From NCBI RefSeq assembly GCF_035594765.1, contig NC_085844.1, positions 55,815,923 through 55,879,922 of the forward strand: 64,000 bases of DNA, written 5' to 3'. The notes under the pieces are model-generated. The model was not told the origin of the DNA and made no database searches. It saw only the letters and a list, made by a program, of their open reading frames with translations. Below, piece after piece: positions 30,493-39,481 of this stretch. This DNA is from Anolis carolinensis (taxonomy: Eukaryota). Every line of letters starts with the position of its first letter. The first letter of the stretch is position 1. A program made the position numbers and the translations under genes.

Positions 30493-30935
30493 TAGAAGTT
30501 ATTACAAATAACTTTTTAATAACTAATTTGAAATAACTCTAGTAAGGAAAAGGAATTGAAGCTAATGCAATCACTCTTATTAGTTATTACCAGTGTTGTT
30601 TCTCAGTAGGCTGATTGCAAGTTGAGAGAGAGAGCCTTTGGATTAGGTGGACTAAAGGGCAGCTGATTTGTGACTTTTTCCTGTTTACCTTAAGGATAAT
30701 TTCAAATTCTAGGTACTGCAAATTGAAACAAGGATTCACATTTAATTATTTTTCCTGCATCTATCTGCTCATAGTTTATTAGAATGTCCAAGTGATGGCA
30801 TATGGATTACAGGCTACAACTGATGTTAATTCAGTTGTTATTGCCATCTGTTTTGATGATATCTTCACAGTCATAGCTACCACTCATTGCATGCTGTGTC
30901 ATATTAAACAGGCATAGCCTAGTGTTATACTTGGA

Positions 30936-31303
30936 TGTCATGCAGCCAGATCCCAGGGCTGAATTTCCAAGCCCTGAATCTGACTTCATAACATAAACAT
31001 GCGAGCACCTGGCGGGAGAAGATAAAATGAGCCTGGGAACTCAGGGGTGAAAGTATAAACAATTATAATTGCTGTAGTGTGGGGGGGATAGAAACCTTGG
31101 TGGAAATGTGATCCAGAAGGTGGGGTTTGATGATGATATTTGCGTGTGATATTACGTTGCATCAGAAGTGATAAAATTAGATGTATGTAAACATTAGGTC
31201 ATTCTCGACTTTTCCAAAGTCATGTATTCTTCAATAAAGATTGTGTTTGAGAGCAGCTGTCTTTGATCTGCGTTCAGACTGGTCCTTTGAAGTAAGCCTG
31301 ACA
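30936..31303 (+). repeat. 5' LTR (368 bp)
   Basis: TG...CA ends with 5-bp inverted termini; no difference from 36255-36622 found on manual comparison. Confidence 0.97.
31170..31238 (+). promoter_or_regulatory. Predicted LTR core promoter and R region
   Basis: TATA-like GATAAAA at 31170-31176; initiator-consensus TCATTCT with A at 31201, about 30 nt downstream; AATAAA at 31233-31238 (36552-36557 in the 3' LTR). Confidence 0.65.
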
Positions 31304-31305
31304 TT

Positions 31306-31317
31306 AAAGTCGAGAAT
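31306..31317 (+). promoter_or_regulatory. Primer-binding site of self-priming type
   Basis: AAAGTCGAGAAT, 2 nt after the 5' LTR, is the exact reverse complement of ATTCTCGACTTT (31201-31212). No TGG tRNA-type PBS is present. Confidence 0.85.
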
Positions 31318-31358
31318 CCCATTTCTCACCCTCCTGCGGAATTCGCAGTGAAGTGATA

Positions 31359-34300
31359 ATGAGCGAGGAAGAAGATCAAAGCCCAAATGAGGCAGAGAGG
31401 CCTTTGCAAGGGGCCCGGCCGAAGAGAGAAGAGACGCTGCAAGCCATAGCTTCCTCTACGGGGTACCCCAAGCCGAACGGCGTGACCCAGAGAATTCCCA
31501 GGCTCGGAAGAGGCGTCTCTGCAGCTGCAGAAACCAGTTGGGGATCTGGAGGAAGTATGCCGGAGACCGTGGCCCTGCGGTTATCCATCCTGGAAACTAA
31601 TTTATCCAGGCTGTCGGAAACCGTGGGGAGATTGGTGCCATTACTGGAAGAGGATCTCCAGAAGGAGGCCAGCCGATATGGCGCCGAGAGAGAACCAAGC
31701 AAAGAAGGAGATTGGAGCCAGAGGGGCCAGCGGGCGTCAACGCAGAGCCCCGTGGCGGCAAGGGACGAGGGAGATGAGGAATACTGGCAGGAGCTGCAGT
31801 TCCGGGACAGCATGGCGCGAGAAGTGGAGCGTCAGCGAGCCCTGGGGACCCTGAGGCCGCCGTCTCCAACAGAGCTCCCAACCCCCCGAATGGGCGTCGG
31901 GGTGGAAAGGCCACTGGGGCCAGGGATCGGGTCCAGTGGATTCGCAGACGAAGGCGGAGAGGAGCGGGGGGTCCAGGAAGAGGAGGAGGATGTGCCGTAC
32001 GACGAGGAAAGGCGAGATGAGGGGGCTACAGCTAGGCCAGTATGCGGATGGGCGGAAGAGCCAACAGCGGCGGCAGACTTCCAGGAGCCGCGCAGAATGA
32101 CCACCGGAGTGGGGCGCGGCGTGTTCCAAGGAGCCACCCGAGGAAACCTGATGCAACCCTTCCCCATGCCGCCCAGACAATATCAAAGGGCTGCAGAATG
32201 GATGCCTAGAAGGGAAGATCTCAAGCTGGAATACGGAGGGGAATCAGAGGAACTGAACTTTTTTCTAATTAGCATTAGAGGATACATGGAAGACAACGCA
32301 CACACATTTCCCTCCGAAGCAAGCAGGGTTCGAGCCATCGGCAACACACTAAAGCGAGGAGCAGCCAGCTGGTATGTGCAATTGCATGCCAGACGCGACC
32401 CATGCCTGAGGTCAGTGCCCCGCTTCCTCGCCGCACTGGAGAACCGGTTCAGAGACCGGCTAGAGCAATTGAGGGCTCGAGACCAGCTGAAAGGAATAAA
32501 ACAGAGGGACAAAACGGTGCCCGAGTACGCAGAGGAATTCCTCCACCTCGCGGAAAGGGTACCGGAGTGGTCTGAAGTAACCAAAGTGGAACTATTTAAA
32601 GAGGGACTACGCCCCGAGATTTTCAGCTGGGCAGCGCACAGAGACGACCCCGAGACGCTCCAGGGATGGATTCAACTAGCGGGGCGCGTCGAATCTACCC
32701 TGGCACAAGTAAAGCGCTTCAGGAGCAGCAGCGGCCAGCAAAGACCGGTGGCGAGAGGTCGAGGAGAAACGAGGAAGCAAGAAAGACCCGGAGGGAGGCC
32801 GGGGATTCCCTCCAGAGGAGACGACAACAAACCTAAACCGGGATGCTTTGTATGTGGGAAGACGGGCCACCGAGCAGCGGAATGCTGGGCCCGGAAGGGG
32901 GAGCCGCCAAAAGCCCCAAAGCCCAAGCCAGCAACCGGGAGGCGTGCGGAGGAAGAGGTGCAGGCCCCAGAATCTTCGGAAAGATTGGTGAGTCGGGACA
33001 AACGCATGATAGTAGTACCAATTTGCCTCTCGGGGCTAGAAAATCGGGCCACCTGCAAGGCGTTTGTAGACTGCGGGTGTTCTAGGAACATTATAACCCC
33101 AGAATTAGCAGGAGCGCTGAAATGCCAGCAGATGGCACTTGACTCCCCAATTGCATTTTCGCAGCTGGATGGGTCAGTCGCTGCTGGGGAAGTATCTACA
33201 AAGGAATTACGGGGAGTTCCATGCAAAATAGGCAAATGGGGAGGAAGAATATCCTTTGTGATAGCCCCTATTGCCACATACCATGTAATATTGGGGATAC
33301 CATGGCTCGAACAAGCAAATCCTGAAGTAGATTGGAGAGGAAAAAGCTTAGCATTTAAAGAACAGCAGATGCAATGGGAGATAAGCAAAATTGCAGAAGA
33401 GGAGGACGAGGAAGACGAAGCAGGGGAAATAGACCCACAGCTATTGCCACCTGAATACAGAGACTTTGCGGATGTTTTCAATCAGAAAGAGGCCAGTAAA
33501 TTGCCTCCCAAAAGAAATGTAGAAGTAGGGATTGAAATAACCCCGGGAGCAGACTTACCAAAACCAAAAGTGTATCCCATGTCTGTGCAAGAGAAGGAGG
33601 AATTGAGAAAATACATTGATAAAAACCTGGCTCGAGGCTTCATTAAGCCATCTAATTCTCCTCTCGGGGCTCCAGTGTTATTTAGGAGAAAGAAAGACAA
33701 TTCCCTAAGATTGTGCATTGATTATCGAAATTTAAACGCAATTACCAAGGACAATAAATACCCTATGCCCTTAGTCAAGGATTTAATTACCGTATTGAAG
33801 AAAGGAAGCATATTTACTAAACTGGATTTAATTGAAGCGTATCATAAATTAAGGATCAAACCGGAGGATACTTGGAAAACCGCATTTTCCTGCGCATTCG
33901 GCCATTTTGAATACGAAATTTTGCCTTTCGGGTTAAAAAATGGAAGCGGCTGCTTTATGCAGCTTATAAATGAAATACTACACCCGTTATTGTACAGAGG
34001 GGTGTTCATATTCCTTGATGATATCTTGATCATTTCTGAAGATAAGGAAAAGCACGTAAAATTGGTCCGGGAAGTTTTGCAGAGACTAAGAGAAGCAAAG
34101 CTGTACGCAAAACTGTCCAAATGTGAATTTAATAAAACTCAAATTGACTTTCTGGGATATCGGATGTCTCCAGAAGGGTTAGCTATGGATCCGGCTAAAG
34201 TAGCAGATGTGAAAGAATGGGGAGTGCCTCAAACAAGGAGGCAATTACAATCATTTCTGGGGTTTGCAAATTTTTACAGACCCTTCATAAAAGGCTTTGC

Positions 34301-36179
34301 ACAAATAACCGCACCCCTTACAGAACTTTTAAAAACAAAAGGGAAAGGGGAGACAGCAAAAGTGAAAGCTCCCGGCGCCAAACTGAGTTGGACGCCAGAA
34401 TGCCAAAAGGCATTCGAGACCTTAAAAGAATGCTTCACTGAAGGACCCATCCTAAAACACCCTGATATCAGGAGCCCTTTCATAATCCATTGCGATGCCT
34501 CAGACTGTGCGTACGGGGCAGTGCTATTGCAAAAGGATCAAAATGGGAACTTAAAACCCTGTGGATATTTGTCACGGAAGTTCAGCGAAACTGAAAAAAG
34601 TTGGCCAATATGGGAAAAAGAGGCATTAGCCATATTAAAAGCCTTAGAATGCTGGCGACACTTCCTCGAAGGAAGCGGAATCCCATTCGAAATTTGGTCT
34701 GACCATAAGAATCTCCAGTATTTAAAGTCTCCTAGAAAATTGTCCCCCAAACAAATCAGATGGGCGCAATACTTCAGCAGATTCGATTTCCAATTAAAGT
34801 TTTTTCAAGGGAAACAGAATGTCTTGGCAGATGCTCTTTCACGCATGCCTCAACACGAAGGCCTAACCACAGCAAAGGAGGGGACAATATTCTCTGACAA
34901 ACAATGGGGCTTAGCTGTCAGGACAAGAGCACAAACCCAAAAGGAGGACACGGCTTTTGTCGAACTCGGCGGGGAAGATAACTGGGGAAATGAACTAAAA
35001 CAGTCTTATAAAGGAGATCAATGGATCGCGTCCAACGCAGAAAAGGGGGACCAGAAGGGGGGATTTTGGTTTGTAAACAAGAAACTGTATATCCCAGCAA
35101 TATTAAGGATTAAGATTCTGCATCGTTTTCACAACAACCAGAGCGCTGGTCATACAGGAATTACCAAAACAACAAAGGCAATAGCAAAACATTGTTGGTG
35201 GCCAGGAATGAGGAAGGACATAAAGAATCATGTTGTCCAATGTGATGATTGTGCCAGAAATAAATCGGGAGGAGGGAAGCCTATGGGATTGTTACAGACA
35301 GTAGCGGAACCTACCAGGCCTTGGGAATGTGTAGCTATGGACTTTGTGGGAGAACTGCCAGTCAGCAAAGGACATCGTTATATTTGGACAGTATTAGACC
35401 TGTTTTCTAAACAGGCCCACTTTATAGCACTGACGAAGCTACCATCGGCTGAGAAACTAGCTGAATTGTACATAAACCATATTTACAAATTACATGGATG
35501 TCCAAGTAGAGTAGTCAGTGACAGAGGAGTACAATTCACAGCAAAATTTTGGGAAAAATTCTTGGAAATGCTAGGAGCAGAAAGGAGTTTAAGTTCTGCT
35601 TTTCACCCCATGACAAACGGGGCGGTAGAACGTACTCAGCAAACGCTTGGGCAGTTCCTTCGAATGTACTCTAACATGAGACAAAATGACTGGTCTAGGT
35701 GGTTGGCGTTTGCGGAACTAGCCTTTAATTCAACTATACATTCAGCAACAAACAAAACCCCCTTTGAAGTAGTTTACGGGTATGAAATACAACCTTTACC
35801 CCAATTGCCGAGGTGGACAGAAAATGAAGGAACAGAGGCAGGGAAATGGAAAACGCAAATGATGGAATGTTGGAATCAAGTGACTGCTTCGTTAAAAGAA
35901 GCACACAAAAAGTATAAAACGTTCGCAGACAGAAAGAGGGTGGAAGGCGATAAATTAGATAAAGGAGATCTAGTGTGGTTAAGTACCCAGAACATCAAAT
36001 TGGGGTTACCTTCAAGAAAACTGGGCCCCAAATATATTGGACCATTCAGAATACAGGGTGTTATCAATGAAGTGACTTTCCAATTGGCATTGCCAAAAAG
36101 TTTAGGGAAAATACACCCAGTCTTCCATCGCAGCTTGCTGAAAAAATATATGGGGACTTTAGACAAAATGGACCCATAG
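31359..36179 (+). CDS. Gag-Pol polyprotein, single ORF of 1606 aa from the first ATG
   Basis: Retrotransposon capsid region (LKRGAASWY..FLAALENRF..IKQRDKTVPEYAEEF), CCHC knuckle CFVCGKTGHRAAEC (32844-32885), protease AFVDCGC (33069), RT LRLCIDYRNLN / FLDD (34011), RNase H DASD..E..D, integrase HHCC zinc finger, D-D-E and GPF motif. Confidence 0.97.
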   Translation: MSEEEDQSPNEAERPLQGARPKREETLQAIASSTGYPKPNGVTQRIPRLGRGVSAAAETSWGSGGSMPETVALRLSILETNLSRLSETVGRLVPLLEEDLQKEASRYGAEREPSKEGDWSQRGQRASTQSPVAARDEGDEEYWQELQFRDSMAREVERQRALGTLRPPSPTELPTPRMGVGVERPLGPGIGSSGFADEGGEERGVQEEEEDVPYDEERRDEGATARPVCGWAEEPTAAADFQEPRRMTTGVGRGVFQGATRGNLMQPFPMPPRQYQRAAEWMPRREDLKLEYGGESEELNFFLISIRGYMEDNAHTFPSEASRVRAIGNTLKRGAASWYVQLHARRDPCLRSVPRFLAALENRFRDRLEQLRARDQLKGIKQRDKTVPEYAEEFLHLAERVPEWSEVTKVELFKEGLRPEIFSWAAHRDDPETLQGWIQLAGRVESTLAQVKRFRSSSGQQRPVARGRGETRKQERPGGRPGIPSRGDDNKPKPGCFVCGKTGHRAAECWARKGEPPKAPKPKPATGRRAEEEVQAPESSERLVSRDKRMIVVPICLSGLENRATCKAFVDCGCSRNIITPELAGALKCQQMALDSPIAFSQLDGSVAAGEVSTKELRGVPCKIGKWGGRISFVIAPIATYHVILGIPWLEQANPEVDWRGKSLAFKEQQMQWEISKIAEEEDEEDEAGEIDPQLLPPEYRDFADVFNQKEASKLPPKRNVEVGIEITPGADLPKPKVYPMSVQEKEELRKYIDKNLARGFIKPSNSPLGAPVLFRRKKDNSLRLCIDYRNLNAITKDNKYPMPLVKDLITVLKKGSIFTKLDLIEAYHKLRIKPEDTWKTAFSCAFGHFEYEILPFGLKNGSGCFMQLINEILHPLLYRGVFIFLDDILIISEDKEKHVKLVREVLQRLREAKLYAKLSKCEFNKTQIDFLGYRMSPEGLAMDPAKVADVKEWGVPQTRRQLQSFLGFANFYRPFIKGFAQITAPLTELLKTKGKGETAKVKAPGAKLSWTPECQKAFETLKECFTEGPILKHPDIRSPFIIHCDASDCAYGAVLLQKDQNGNLKPCGYLSRKFSETEKSWPIWEKEALAILKALECWRHFLEGSGIPFEIWSDHKNLQYLKSPRKLSPKQIRWAQYFSRFDFQLKFFQGKQNVLADALSRMPQHEGLTTAKEGTIFSDKQWGLAVRTRAQTQKEDTAFVELGGEDNWGNELKQSYKGDQWIASNAEKGDQKGGFWFVNKKLYIPAILRIKILHRFHNNQSAGHTGITKTTKAIAKHCWWPGMRKDIKNHVVQCDDCARNKSGGGKPMGLLQTVAEPTRPWECVAMDFVGELPVSKGHRYIWTVLDLFSKQAHFIALTKLPSAEKLAELYINHIYKLHGCPSRVVSDRGVQFTAKFWEKFLEMLGAERSLSSAFHPMTNGAVERTQQTLGQFLRMYSNMRQNDWSRWLAFAELAFNSTIHSATNKTPFEVVYGYEIQPLPQLPRWTENEGTEAGKWKTQMMECWNQVTASLKEAHKKYKTFADRKRVEGDKLDKGDLVWLSTQNIKLGLPSRKLGPKYIGPFRIQGVINEVTFQLALPKSLGKIHPVFHRSLLKKYMGTLDKMDP

Positions 36180-36202
36180 AGTTATTGTTTGATTTGTTTC
36201 AG
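32988..36202 (+). other. Predicted GT-AG intron spanning the whole pol region (3215 nt)
   Basis: Donor TTG|GTGAGT in phase 0 between the zinc knuckle and protease; acceptor GTTATTGTTTGATTTGTTTCAG|G 23 nt after the pol stop; the downstream frame stays open for 35 codons to TAA at 36308-36310. Confidence 0.6.
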
Positions 36203-36211
36203 GACTATGGT

Positions 36212-36254
36212 GAAAGAAGAACCGAAGAGGAGGACGAAGAAAACGGGGGCGCCA
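36212..36254 (+). promoter_or_regulatory. Polypurine tract region
   Basis: GAAAGAAGAACCGAAGAGGAGGACGAAGAAAACGGGGGCGCCA directly precedes the 3' LTR. Confidence 0.8.
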
Positions 36255-36622
36255 TGTCATGCAGCCAGATCCCAGGGCTGAATTTCCAAGCCCTGAATCT
36301 GACTTCATAACATAAACATGCGAGCACCTGGCGGGAGAAGATAAAATGAGCCTGGGAACTCAGGGGTGAAAGTATAAACAATTATAATTGCTGTAGTGTG
36401 GGGGGGATAGAAACCTTGGTGGAAATGTGATCCAGAAGGTGGGGTTTGATGATGATATTTGCGTGTGATATTACGTTGCATCAGAAGTGATAAAATTAGA
36501 TGTATGTAAACATTAGGTCATTCTCGACTTTTCCAAAGTCATGTATTCTTCAATAAAGATTGTGTTTGAGAGCAGCTGTCTTTGATCTGCGTTCAGACTG
36601 GTCCTTTGAAGTAAGCCTGACA
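36255..36622 (+). repeat. 3' LTR (368 bp)
   Basis: Copy of 30936-31303. Confidence 0.97.
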
Positions 36623-37630
36623 CTTGGATGCGTGGAAACAAATGCATTTTTAAAGCAAGAACCTCGACCTTTCTGCTTCACACACATTGGAGTGATACAC
36701 CAGGTGCGGTTGTGTGTTGTTGTTTTTATTAATCGGATAGTGTATTTACCTGTAAGATCAAACTATTTGTATAACATACCAGTGACATACAGAAGGACCT
36801 TTTCTCAGATATGCTGAGGGAATTGAACCCTGTACAACAGAGCTGGGAGCTGCGTCTTACCTAGCAACTGTTTCTAAGTAGGACAACCTATCACTGCTCC
36901 CATGGAGGAACGAAAGGAGCTTGCAATACTGTTGGGAAGAAAGACTAATGCTAGGCCTGAGATGGAAAGGGGGAGGAGGGCACCAAAGAGCTGCGGCTCA
37001 GAGCAGGGAAGGTTTTAGGATCAATTTGGCTGTGCAAGGAATGCCTGTAGCCGAAAAAAAACAAAACAAAGGACCTTTGCAGTGGTAGCGGGGTAGTAAT
37101 TAATAAGAGGAGAGGAGCTTAAGCATTAAGGATACTAGAAAGCTTTCTTGTTTAAAGCAAAGATTCATGATACCATACACATTTAAAGCACAAAAAACCC
37201 CCAAAATTAGCTGCAGAAATCCACATTCCTCTTAAAATATTGTTTCTAAAAATGAGTCTAATATCTCACAAACTCCAAACTTTGTCATTCACAAATACAC
37301 ATCTATATTCCTTCCAAATTAAAGTCAACCTGAGAATTAAGATTTACATGGTTTTTGGAACATTTTAAAATTAAGGCTTTGACAGTTGGCACTGAGTAAA
37401 ATCTGGATGTTACAGATGGAAGCCTTAGATAGGTGAGATGAGTATGGAGGACTAGGACATTTTGGCAAGTTCATTTCCCTGATGTTTTTAGGCACTTGCA
37501 TATTGAAATAAAAATTAAATAGCTTGCAGTCCCTCTGTTTAACAACAGTATTTTTAACTCTCTTCTCCCCCATCCTGATAATTGCTTCCCATCATGGGGC
37601 CTAGAGAAGCTTGCAGTGATTGTTTTAGCC

Positions 37631-37760: not shown

Positions 37761-38267
<507 letters not shown>

Positions 38268-39481
38268 TGATGTCATTTATGCCAGACTGTGACTTTGGGT
38301 CAGCTTCTGTGCGAATATCAGATTAGTGATATTGATTAGGAATTATTTAAAAAGTCAAGTGTGCAGAAGGATCAGGCATGCATCTACCTGAACTGCTTTT
38401 CAAATTCCTTCATATAATTCACTTTATCATACTTAGTGATGCAGGATTTTAACAGTCTTGGTGTTGAGCAAAATATTCTCTTCTCTCGAAGGAGGTCCCT
38501 GGGTTTTGCTCATTTCTCCCTCCACTTGTCACCCTCAATTCCACATCCCATGTTGCTCTGGAAAGACCCTGAACCTTACTAGGAAGGTACTACAGTGGGA
38601 AGAAGGCAATTCCCAGTATGCCTTATTATTCTAAATGCTTTCCACGAATTACTCAATGTATTTTCCATGTAAACGTCCACTCTTTTTTATAGTGACTTTT
38701 AACTGTATCTGTTTTAATTTTTGTAAGCTACTTTTGGTCCCAGTATTGTGAAAGGCAAAGTATGAATGGAATAATAACACCAAGAACAACATCAGAAGTG
38801 TTTTCTGCACTCTTATTCCCCAAACCAAGGCAGCGCTGAACATGGAGTTCAGTGTTGCGTCTCTTCTGAATTAAAGACGGCTTTCAAAAGCAGGCTGTGA
38901 TATTACATTGAGGATGAAATGTCTTATTGAGAGATATATTAGAAAACAGTAGGTTATAGTTCTTGAGCATATTAAAGTAGCTTTTTGAATTGTGGTCTTC
39001 ACTTTTTCTCCAGAGAAAGTTTGTGACATGTTCTTGATATAGGAGACACATGGCTATTCTAACCTTATGCAGAAGAAATGGAAAACAGGGTGTGAGACAT
39101 TGCATGTGTGTTACAAAATCATATGGTGCAGATGGATTCCCATTGAGTCTATTGTATTCTTTTTCCATCTGCCTATATAAATTCTTAAGGAAGAGAACAT
39201 CACATTTGTACAGAGCTAAAACAGGGTAGGTCTAGAATTCAGGAAATTTCTTATTTTCTCCTCATAGCACCACAAACCCAATTTGGCTGTGGCCTGATTG
39301 GTCACTGTACTTATATGTATGCAAACGTATTCATATACATGCCTACATCAAACTGCAAAGAGGGAAGCTTCTTTTCTCCCAAAGGGAAGAATCTATTATT
39401 GCCTCATATTTGAATTCCCAATACAGAACAGAGGCATGCTGGAATTTTGCTCAGATGTTTATGAACACACAATATTTCCAG

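What the first reader, a model, noticed from the sequence alone, without database searches (positions are those of the whole stretch)
32985..36310. Pol appears to be a removable intron: predicted spliced Gag with a C-terminal exon encoded across the PPT and 3' LTR
Seen in sequence: gag and pol form one ORF with no frameshift or stop between them. A consensus donor TTG|GTGAGT (intron start 32988, phase 0) lies between the CCHC knuckle (ends 32885) and the protease active site (33069). The short stretch after the pol stop is a T-rich island ending TTTGTTTCAG|G (36202) in otherwise purine-rich sequence. Joining the two sites keeps the frame: ...ESSERL|DYGERRTEEEDEENGGAMSCSQIPGLNFQALNLTS* (stop 36308-36310), giving a 578-aa Gag. 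The PPT and start of U3 would thus double as coding sequence. Established: retroelements need Gag in excess of Pol; sushi-ichi/PEG10 use a -1 frameshift at about this position, Tf1 degrades Pol products, and Drosophila copia and Arabidopsis EVADE use spliced gag RNAs. Inference: this vertebrate Gypsy lineage sets its Gag:Pol ratio by splicing out pol. I do not know of a description of this for vertebrate sushi-like elements but cannot check the literature.
Basis: partly seen in the sequence, partly recalled or inferred. Interest (0 to 1): 0.9.

Follow-up and report, generated by a model that had tools for sequence, protein, structure and literature searches.

The report
Lizard retrotransposon splices pol out
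A young Ty3/Gypsy retrotransposon of the green anole has gag and pol in one reading frame, and it also makes a shorter spliced RNA that removes pol as a 3.2-kb intron and encodes Gag alone; this trick was known from fly and plant Copia elements but, as far as I could find, not from vertebrate Gypsy elements.

Summary

- **Element:** an intact Ty3/Gypsy element of Anolis carolinensis with identical 368-bp LTRs and one gag-pol ORF.
- **Junction in a run:** one transcriptome-sized run (X1) has a contig joining 32987|36203 with GT..AG ends. A 1.7-Gb genomic run lacks that joint.
- **Gene models:** RefSeq holds at least 18 gag-only models of 566-578 aa. Four have a C-terminus identical to the predicted tail.
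- **Conservation:** the same design recurs in six Anolis families (Gag 47-99% identical, two species) and in three snake species. It consists of a phase-0 donor GTRAGT read as Val-Ser, an intron usually of 3.2-3.5 kb that holds pol, and a pyrimidine tract plus AG between the pol stop and the polypurine tract.
- **Tail:** it varies from 5 to 35 residues, so it is probably incidental.
- **What is inferred:** that splicing sets the Gag:Pol ratio rests on analogy with Drosophila copia and plant Ty1/Copia elements; no protein data exist.
- **Caveats:** one contig in one of three runs, whose RNA status is only guessed; contigs cannot quantify.

I class it as a new variant of a known strategy.

The parts
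30930..30935 (+). Target-site duplication, left copy (CTTGGA; 5 or 6 bp, because the A also precedes the 3' LTR)
30936..31303 (+). 5' LTR, 368 bp, TG..CA, identical to the 3' LTR
31201..31212 (+). LTR stretch complementary to the primer-binding site; presumed start of R and of the transcript (Tf1/sushi-type self-primer)
31306..31317 (+). Primer-binding site with 12-nt complementarity to 31201-31212
31359..32987 (+). Exon-1 coding part: Gag, 543 aa (PEG10/Ty3-type capsid, CCHC knuckle at 32844-32885)
31359..36179 (+). Unspliced reading: a single Gag-PR-RT-RNaseH-IN polyprotein ORF
32985..32993 (+). Splice donor TTG|GTGAGT, phase 0; GTG-AGT is read as Val-Ser in the polyprotein
32988..36202 (+). 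Intron of 3215 nt holding all of pol (protease to integrase) and the pol stop
36180..36202 (+). T-rich tract plus CAG: the splice acceptor, lying in the 23 nt after the pol stop
36203..36310 (+). Exon-2 coding part: a 35-codon tail plus stop, reading through the PPT region and 56 nt of U3
36212..36254 (+). Purine-rich polypurine-tract region, translated as an acidic run in the spliced RNA
36255..36622 (+). 3' LTR; AATAAA at 36552-36557
36623..36628 (+). Target-site duplication, right copy (CTTGGA)

Best explanation
This is an intact, very young Ty3/Gypsy LTR retrotransposon of the green anole, of the self-priming type with a PEG10-type capsid.

The full-length RNA encodes only a Gag-Pol fusion and presumably also serves as the genome. 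Part of the transcripts are spliced from a donor at the Gag/protease boundary (32987|32988) to an acceptor placed between the pol stop and the polypurine tract (36202|36203). This removes all of pol as a 3215-nt intron. The resulting RNA of about 2.2 kb encodes Gag plus a short tail that simply reads on through the polypurine tract and the start of U3 to the first stop.

**Shown:** both sites exist; the junction exists in a sequenced contig and in RefSeq models; both sites are conserved in diverged relatives.

**Inferred:** the spliced RNA is translated; it supplies the excess of Gag over Pol that particle assembly needs; the moderate acceptor keeps splicing partial.
For: 1. **Junction in a run (table 5).** Run X1 has a contig joining 32986/7 to 36202/3, skipping 3215 nt, with GT..AG ends. 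Its shorter side is 28 nt plus 2 ambiguous letters. That equals k-1 if Logan builds its contigs with 31-letter words (my assumption), which is what a junction-specific piece would show. The upstream X1 contig ends exactly at 32988. The joint is absent from the 1.7-Gb genomic run X15, so it is not a DNA deletion copy.
2. **Gene models.** At least 18 RefSeq models of Anolis carolinensis are gag-only proteins of 566-578 aa. Four of them (P0002-P0005) have a C-terminus identical to the predicted junction and tail.
3. **Models span full elements.** They cover 4.6-5.0 kb, with one phase-0 GT..AG intron of 3191-3228 nt holding pol. The gag-pol frame is intact in 4 of 5 loci.
4. **Conservation.** Six Anolis families (Gag 47-99% identical, two species) keep YTG|GTRAGT and a pyrimidine tract plus CAG|G. 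The acceptor lies 19-24 nt after the pol stop in the four loci with an intact frame. The flanking sequence differs between families.
5. **Snakes.** Three snake species, with Gag only distantly related, have ATG|GTGAGT at the end of Gag and a pyrimidine tract plus AG between the pol stop and the PPT. One of these models is a GenBank submitter annotation rather than a RefSeq model.
6. **Donor specificity.** GTRAGT occurs only 1-2 times per element. The copy at the Gag/PR boundary is the only shared one, always as codons GTR-AGT (Val-Ser), in 7 of 7 loci.
7. **No other route to free Gag.** There is no stop or slippery site between gag and pol, so the unspliced RNA alone cannot give Gag in excess.
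8. **Precedent.** The same logic is established for Drosophila copia and plant Ty1/Copia elements (PMC5580714, PMC3735527).
Against: - The junction was seen in one contig of one run out of three transcriptome-sized runs. The tool only guesses that these runs are RNA, and contigs cannot give levels.
- The evidence behind the RefSeq models cannot be inspected here.
- The loci were found through models that already contain the junction, so they are not an unbiased sample of copies.
- The window's pyrimidine tract is only moderate.
- The tail is not conserved: 5-35 aa, with variable sequence.
- There is no protein, ribosome or particle evidence.
- Tf1 shows that a single-ORF element can reach a Gag excess without splicing (my own knowledge).
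Confidence: 0.78

Rival explanations
1. The splice is real but has no role for the element. It would be by-product splicing of a long intronic transcript by the host machinery, or a host-side way of destroying genomic RNA.
For: Only one junction contig was seen. The element lies in sense orientation just upstream of a weak C2H2 zinc-finger ORF, so it may sit inside a host gene. In two other runs, foreign sequences abut the acceptor (table 7). RefSeq also has chimeric models that join the Gag donor to exons 10-90 kb away.
Against: Both sites are kept at the same topological places in six Anolis families and three snake species while their surroundings have diverged. The donor keeps one codon choice in 7 of 7 loci. 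A harmful or neutral site would be lost in elements that turn over this fast.
Confidence: 0.1
2. The spliced RNA encodes a distinct Gag isoform with a job of its own, such as a regulator or a dominant-negative copy-number controller. On this view the acidic tail matters and the Gag:Pol ratio is not the point.
For: All five fully mapped Anolis loci read the PPT in the frame that gives an acidic run followed by Met-Ser. The acceptor-to-LTR distances (52, 52, 22, 25, 28 nt) are all 1 modulo 3.
Against: Tail length and sequence vary widely: 13-35 aa in Anolis and 5 aa in two snake models, where the stop falls before the LTR. A purine tract has no stops in any frame and tends to encode Glu, Asp, Lys, Arg or Gly.
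Confidence: 0.08
3. The finding is an artefact. The junction contig would be an assembly chimera, the gene models would be ab initio guesses, and the T-rich island would be only the U-rich box that some retroviruses carry upstream of the PPT for plus-strand priming.
For: The shorter side of the junction contig is 28 nt, below the tool's 31-nt rule for counting a contig as bridging. The RNA status of the runs is a guess. T-rich boxes next to PPTs exist in retroviruses (my own knowledge).
Against: The coordinates were predicted in advance and were hit to the base with GT..AG ends. It is one of only two skipping joints seen in the three small runs. A GenBank submitter annotation that is not a RefSeq model gives the same kind of junction in a rattlesnake. 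A decayed copy whose reading frame is lost still carries both signals.
Confidence: 0.04

Closest known systems
Drosophila copia (Ty1/Copia): a 2-kb spliced RNA made by removing an intron of about 3 kb
   Same: One gag-pol ORF. A very long intron that removes pol. A subgenomic RNA of about 2 kb that supplies the capsid protein in excess. The intron length is cited in PMC5580714; the rest is my own knowledge.
   Different: It belongs to a different superfamily (Ty1/Copia, domain order PR-IN-RT) and its host is an insect. Here the acceptor lies after the pol stop, so the tail is read from the PPT and U3.
Arabidopsis EVD and other plant Ty1/Copia elements (shGAG RNA); barley BARE1
   Same: Alternative splicing yields an RNA dedicated to Gag. 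The splice sites are conserved across families (PMC5580714, PMC3735527).
   Different: In plants a short intron around the protease is removed. This is coupled to early polyadenylation (EVD) or creates a stop (BARE1, 104 nt). PMC5580714 found no conserved splicing features in Arabidopsis Ty3/Gypsy elements.
sushi-ichi / PEG10 (vertebrate Ty3/Gypsy lineage with a PEG10-type capsid)
   Same: Pfam labels the capsid as the PEG10/Ty3 type. The need for more Gag than Pol arises at the same gene boundary.
   Different: Those use a -1 ribosomal frameshift (my own knowledge). Here there is no stop and no slippery heptamer. Many distant relatives in the protein search end '...GN..LL' soon after the knuckle, which fits frameshift-type gag ORFs; I did not verify this.
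Tf1 of fission yeast
   Same: A single gag-pol ORF. Self-priming of reverse transcription (12-nt complementarity). A Tf2-type SH3 domain in the integrase.
   Different: Tf1 is reported to reach a Gag excess by degrading Pol products, not by splicing (my own knowledge).
Cer1 of C. elegans (Ty3/Gypsy) and the plant Gypsy elements Ogre and CRR
   Same: Ty3/Gypsy elements whose genomic RNA is also spliced (PMC10309623, PMC3735527).
   Different: Cer1 splices five exons to make the accessory export factor CERV, not Gag. Ogre splices between ORFs. CRR removes RT.
Foamy viruses
   Same: They set Gag and Pol levels with a separate spliced RNA rather than by recoding (PMC7828637 lists this topic; the detail is my own knowledge).
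   Different: The logic is reversed: Pol comes from the spliced RNA and Gag from the unspliced one.

Membership tests
Ty3/Gypsy (Metaviridae) LTR retrotransposon | Domain order Gag-PR-RT-RNaseH-IN | tested here: met
   Pfam hits lie in that order along the 1608-aa ORF.
Ty3/Gypsy (Metaviridae) LTR retrotransposon | Direct LTRs ending TG..CA, flanked by a target-site duplication | tested here: met
   Identical 368-bp LTRs with CTTGGA on both flanks.
Tf1/sushi group | Self-priming: the primer-binding site is complementary to the 5' end of the element's own transcript, not to a tRNA | tested here: met
   PBS 31306-31317 is complementary over 12 nt to LTR 31201-31212. The transcription start itself was not mapped.
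Tf1/sushi group | RT/IN phylogeny places the element with Tf1 and sushi | not tested
   Only indirect hints exist: an SH3_Tf2-1 domain and a PEG10-type capsid in Pfam.
Chromoviruses | [quoted passage not shown] | tested here: not met
   The Pfam scan gave no chromodomain hit; the ORF ends just after the SH3 domain. I therefore do not file the element as a chromovirus.
Gag-by-splicing expression strategy (copia / EVD type) | gag and pol in one ORF with no recoding site | tested here: met
Gag-by-splicing expression strategy (copia / EVD type) | A GT..AG intron whose removal leaves a Gag-only ORF | tested here: met
Gag-by-splicing expression strategy (copia / EVD type) | The junction is present in RNA and absent from genomic DNA | tested here: met
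   One junction contig in run X1 and none in genomic run X15, plus the RefSeq models. Caveats: a single contig, and the run's RNA status is a guess.
Gag-by-splicing expression strategy (copia / EVD type) | Splice sites conserved among related families | tested here: met
   Six Anolis families and three snake species.
Gag-by-splicing expression strategy (copia / EVD type) | The spliced RNA is translated and gives Gag in excess of Pol | not testable with these tools
   This needs ribosome profiling, proteomics or western blots.

The most novel reading that the evidence does not exclude
A whole clade of squamate Ty3/Gypsy elements, in iguanian lizards and snakes, has replaced the ancestral gag/pol frameshift with alternative splicing of pol, using a donor and acceptor kept since before these families diverged. 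Because each copy carries a working donor at the end of Gag and a working acceptor plus poly(A) signal at its 3' end, sense insertions in introns act as natural gene traps. This would explain the chimeric host-element transcripts and the many RefSeq 'uncharacterized' or 'PEG10' genes, which are really retrotransposon Gag RNAs.
Probability: 0.4. Interest if true: 0.75.

Novelty: new variant of a known kind. Interest (0 to 1): 0.66.

Why it matters
**Convergent solution.** How single-ORF LTR elements get more Gag than Pol has been answered for only a few models. This finding would add a splicing-based answer, convergent with the Copia one, in vertebrate Ty3/Gypsy elements. That is the lineage that gave rise to PEG10, the RTL genes and Arc-like genes.

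**Annotation.** Dozens of RefSeq entries in anoles and snakes, named 'uncharacterized protein LOC...' or 'retrotransposon-derived protein PEG10', are spliced Gag messages of active or recently active retrotransposons. They are not host genes. Surveys of Gag domestication could misread them.

**Effect on host genes.** The paired splice signals give these elements a built-in potential to trap host transcripts.

Tried and rejected
- **Word-indexed profile search.** The search with a five-family Gag alignment returned only Anolis proteins again. The exhaustive search was needed to reach snakes and geckos.
- **Gecko model P0045.** It is an ordinary intronless gag ORF with no pol behind it, so it says nothing about splicing.
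- **Anolis model P0040.** It has only a 123-nt intron inside gag, which is a different matter.
- **Acceptor screen.** My screen (9 or more pyrimidines in 12, plus YAG) found seven other sites in the element and missed the real one. Motif strength alone would not have picked this acceptor.
- **Foreign sequences at the acceptor.** The sequences abutting it in X3 and X6 are not in the window or in any fetched locus, so their origin is unknown.
- **Contig depths in X1.** The exon-1 end is at 34.5, the junction at 17.5, intron pieces at 17-22 and the tail at 33. These figures add up as if about half the RNA were spliced. The tool warns that contig depth cannot rank parts of a gene, so I do not rely on this.
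- **Corn-snake OCA2 insertion (PMC4657000).** It is a Copia element and is not relevant here.
- **Not used.** No complex or structure prediction was run; none would bear on the question.
- **Handling of the spliced model.** The joined model of the window was never sent to a search tool. Exon 1 was searched by reference, and the tail was translated on its own and compared by script. In scripts, the exons of public loci were concatenated in memory only to locate annotated junctions; nothing joined was printed or saved.
- **No reconstruction.** The consensus lines that the alignment tools print by themselves were not used.
Full report
**1. The observation**

- A single ORF runs from 31353 (ATG at 31359) to the stop at 36177-36179.
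- Its Pfam domains lie in the order capsid (Retrotrans_gag / Ty3_capsid), CCHC knuckle, aspartic protease, RT, RNase H, integrase, Tf2-type SH3.
- The knuckle is at 32844-32885 and the protease Asp codon at 33069-33071. There is no slippery heptamer near the boundary.
- Between knuckle and protease lies TTG|GTGAGT, with the intron starting at 32988 in phase 0.
- The 23 nt after the pol stop are T-rich and end in TTTGTTTCAG at 36202.
- Translated separately, exon 1 gives 543 aa and the stretch from 36203 gives 35 codons before the stop at 36308-36310. The total is 578 aa.
- The LTRs are 30936-31303 and 36255-36622. They are 368 bp long, identical and end TG..CA, with CTTGGA on both flanks. The tail therefore crosses the purine-rich PPT region and 56 nt of U3.

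**2. Direct test of the junction**

Twenty public runs of the same organism hold half or more of the element's sampled words. Fourteen of them have contig sets of 11-79 Mb, which is transcriptome size; the tool marks these as 'RNA?', a guess.

I laid three such runs from three studies, plus one 1.7-Gb genomic run, on 31304-36650. Table 5 lists a joint from 32986 to 36202 that skips 3215 nt, with ends GT..AG when the cut is moved by one. That is exactly 32987|36203.

- The joint is in run X1, as one contig with depth 17.5. Its shorter side is 28 nt plus 2 ambiguous letters.
- That sum equals k-1 if Logan builds its contigs with 31-letter words (my assumption). A junction-specific piece would then look like this.
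- The upstream X1 contig ends at 32988, which is the branch point.
- The joint is absent from X3, X6 and the genomic run X15.
- The three small runs show only two skipping joints in all. The other is a 52-nt length variant in U3.

A chance hit on coordinates named in advance is not credible. Absence from deep genomic DNA argues against a deleted DNA copy. If such copies were common enough to give half the family's depth in X1, they should appear among the 12,329 contigs of X15.

Limits: one contig, one run, guessed RNA status, and no quantification.

**3. Gene models**

Searching exon 1 by reference identified the organism as Anolis carolinensis. It returned at least 18 RefSeq 'uncharacterized protein LOC1342...' entries of 566-578 aa with capsid domains only.

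Their C-termini carry the junction. Four of them (P0002-P0005) are identical to the predicted tail. The encoding loci span 4.6-5.0 kb, and each resolves into exactly one phase-0 GT..AG intron of 3191-3228 nt. The read-through gag-pol frame is open for 1500-1606 aa in four of five loci. So these are models of spliced transcripts from full-length elements, not gag-only DNA copies.

I cannot see what evidence NCBI's pipeline used for them.

**4. Conservation**

The five mapped Anolis loci represent the window's family, a 90% subfamily, a 62% family and two A. sagrei families at about 55% Gag identity.

- All have YTG|GTRAGTC at the Gag/protease boundary.
- All have a pyrimidine tract plus CAG|G. 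It lies 19-24 nt after the pol stop in the four loci with an intact frame; L003 has an early stop in pol.
- After the acceptor comes the PPT, read as Glu/Asp-rich residues, and then the LTR start A|TGTCA, read as Met-Ser.
- The pyrimidine tracts differ in sequence but not in character. The linker upstream of the donor is diverged.

A sixth, decayed family at 47% identity keeps both signals even though the gag reading frame no longer continues past the donor.

The exhaustive profile search and cluster names led to snakes:

- **Pantherophis guttatus:** ATG|GTGAGTG in phase 0, a 3524-nt intron holding pol, and an acceptor between the pol stop and the PPT/LTR.
- **Crotalus adamanteus:** a GenBank submitter annotation rather than a RefSeq model. 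It shows ATG|GTGAGTC and a pyrimidine tract plus CAG directly before the PPT. The intron is shorter here, 2244 nt.
- **Crotalus tigris:** the same donor and an intact 1531-aa gag-pol frame. A matching acceptor motif lies 37 nt after the pol stop, although its RefSeq model joins the donor to an exon 10 kb away.

In all seven fully mapped loci GTRAGT occurs only once or twice per element. The shared copy is always the codon pair GTR-AGT, read Val-Ser, while the neighbouring codons differ.

These loci were found through models that contain the junction, so they are not an unbiased sample. Even so, retention of both signals at the same places across this much divergence is hard to explain without selection acting on the element.

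**5. Mechanism**

*Shown:* one ORF; one strong donor; an acceptor after the pol stop; the junction in a sequenced contig and in gene models; conservation of both sites.

*Inferred:* transcripts start near 31201 and end after the AATAAA at 36552-36557. Unspliced RNA gives the Gag-Pol fusion and serves as the genome. A spliced RNA of about 2.2 kb gives the 578-aa Gag. Its stop lies in the last exon, so it should not be a target of nonsense-mediated decay. The only moderate pyrimidine tract and the long intron would keep splicing partial.

The tail varies from 5 to 35 residues, so it is most simply the read-out of whatever follows the acceptor. One weak hint of frame constraint exists: the acceptor-to-LTR distance is 1 modulo 3 in all five Anolis loci despite four different lengths.

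**6. Comparison with what is known**

- The logic matches Drosophila copia, whose intron is about 3 kb, and plant Ty1/Copia elements (PMC5580714, PMC3735527).
- PMC5580714 reports no conserved splicing features in Arabidopsis Ty3/Gypsy elements.
- Ty3/Gypsy elements known to splice do so for other products: Cer1 makes the export factor CERV (PMC10309623). Ogre and CRR splice between ORFs or remove RT (PMC3735527).
- A survey of vertebrate metaviral capsid genes that included the anole worked from ORFs and does not mention this (PMC11011659).
- Six full-text searches found no description for vertebrate Ty3/Gypsy elements. The library does not cover most subscription journals, so this is absence of evidence.
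- The scan's own notes hold nothing similar on other DNA.

**7. Family placement**

Membership in Ty3/Gypsy is met. The Tf1/sushi-type self-priming signature is present, with 12 nt of complementarity. No chromodomain was found. No RT phylogeny was made, so the exact clade stays open.

**8. Verdict**

The splice is real with high probability and is conserved. Its role in Gag:Pol balance is the best reading but is not demonstrated.

It is a new variant of a known strategy, and of clear interest to transposon biology and to genome annotation.

Noticed in passing
window 36200-36211 (table 7): In runs X3 and X6, contigs carry unrelated sequence directly in front of 36203 (X3, 30 nt) or 36200 (X6, 255 nt, compatible with an exon ending in CAG). 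This looks as if other exons splice into the element's acceptor. The foreign letters are not in the window or in any fetched locus.
   Followed up: partly
window 36137-36650 (table 2): In X3 the last ~500 nt of the element (tail plus 3' LTR) have about ten times the contig depth of the rest. This could reflect terminal-exon use, solo LTRs or LTR-driven transcripts. Contig depth is unreliable.
   Followed up: no
L005 1501-91497 and L011 1501-12756: RefSeq models P0037 (A. carolinensis) and P0065 (C. tigris) are chimeras. P0037 joins an upstream exon to a gag segment about 86 kb away, and that segment then splices donor-to-acceptor within the element. P0065 joins the Gag donor to an exon 10 kb downstream.
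   Followed up: partly
P0032, P0041, P0055: Database entries named 'retrotransposon-derived protein PEG10' in A. sagrei and C. adamanteus are spliced Gag models of LTR elements with pol in the intron. They are not PEG10 orthologues. The A. carolinensis entry with that name (P0041) was not mapped.
   Followed up: partly
window 31201-31212 and 31306-31317: The site just after the 5' LTR and a stretch inside the LTR are complementary over 12 nt. This is the Tf1/sushi-type self-priming signature, and it also suggests where transcription starts.
   Followed up: yes
window 37794-38270 (+): An ORF 1.2 kb downstream of the element, on the same strand, has a weak C2H2 zinc-finger hit (E = 0.0055, below Pfam's cut-off). 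This is compatible with the element lying in sense orientation inside a zinc-finger gene. I did not verify which gene.
   Followed up: partly
window 36295-36348 (table 5): One X3 contig lacks 52 nt of U3, which is a length variant among family copies.
   Followed up: no
distant Gag relatives: Many gag-only proteins of other squamates and unnamed sources end '...GN..LL' shortly after the knuckle. That is what a gag ORF stopping just past a GGGAAAC slippery site would look like. If so, the splicing clade sits among frameshift-type relatives.
   Followed up: no
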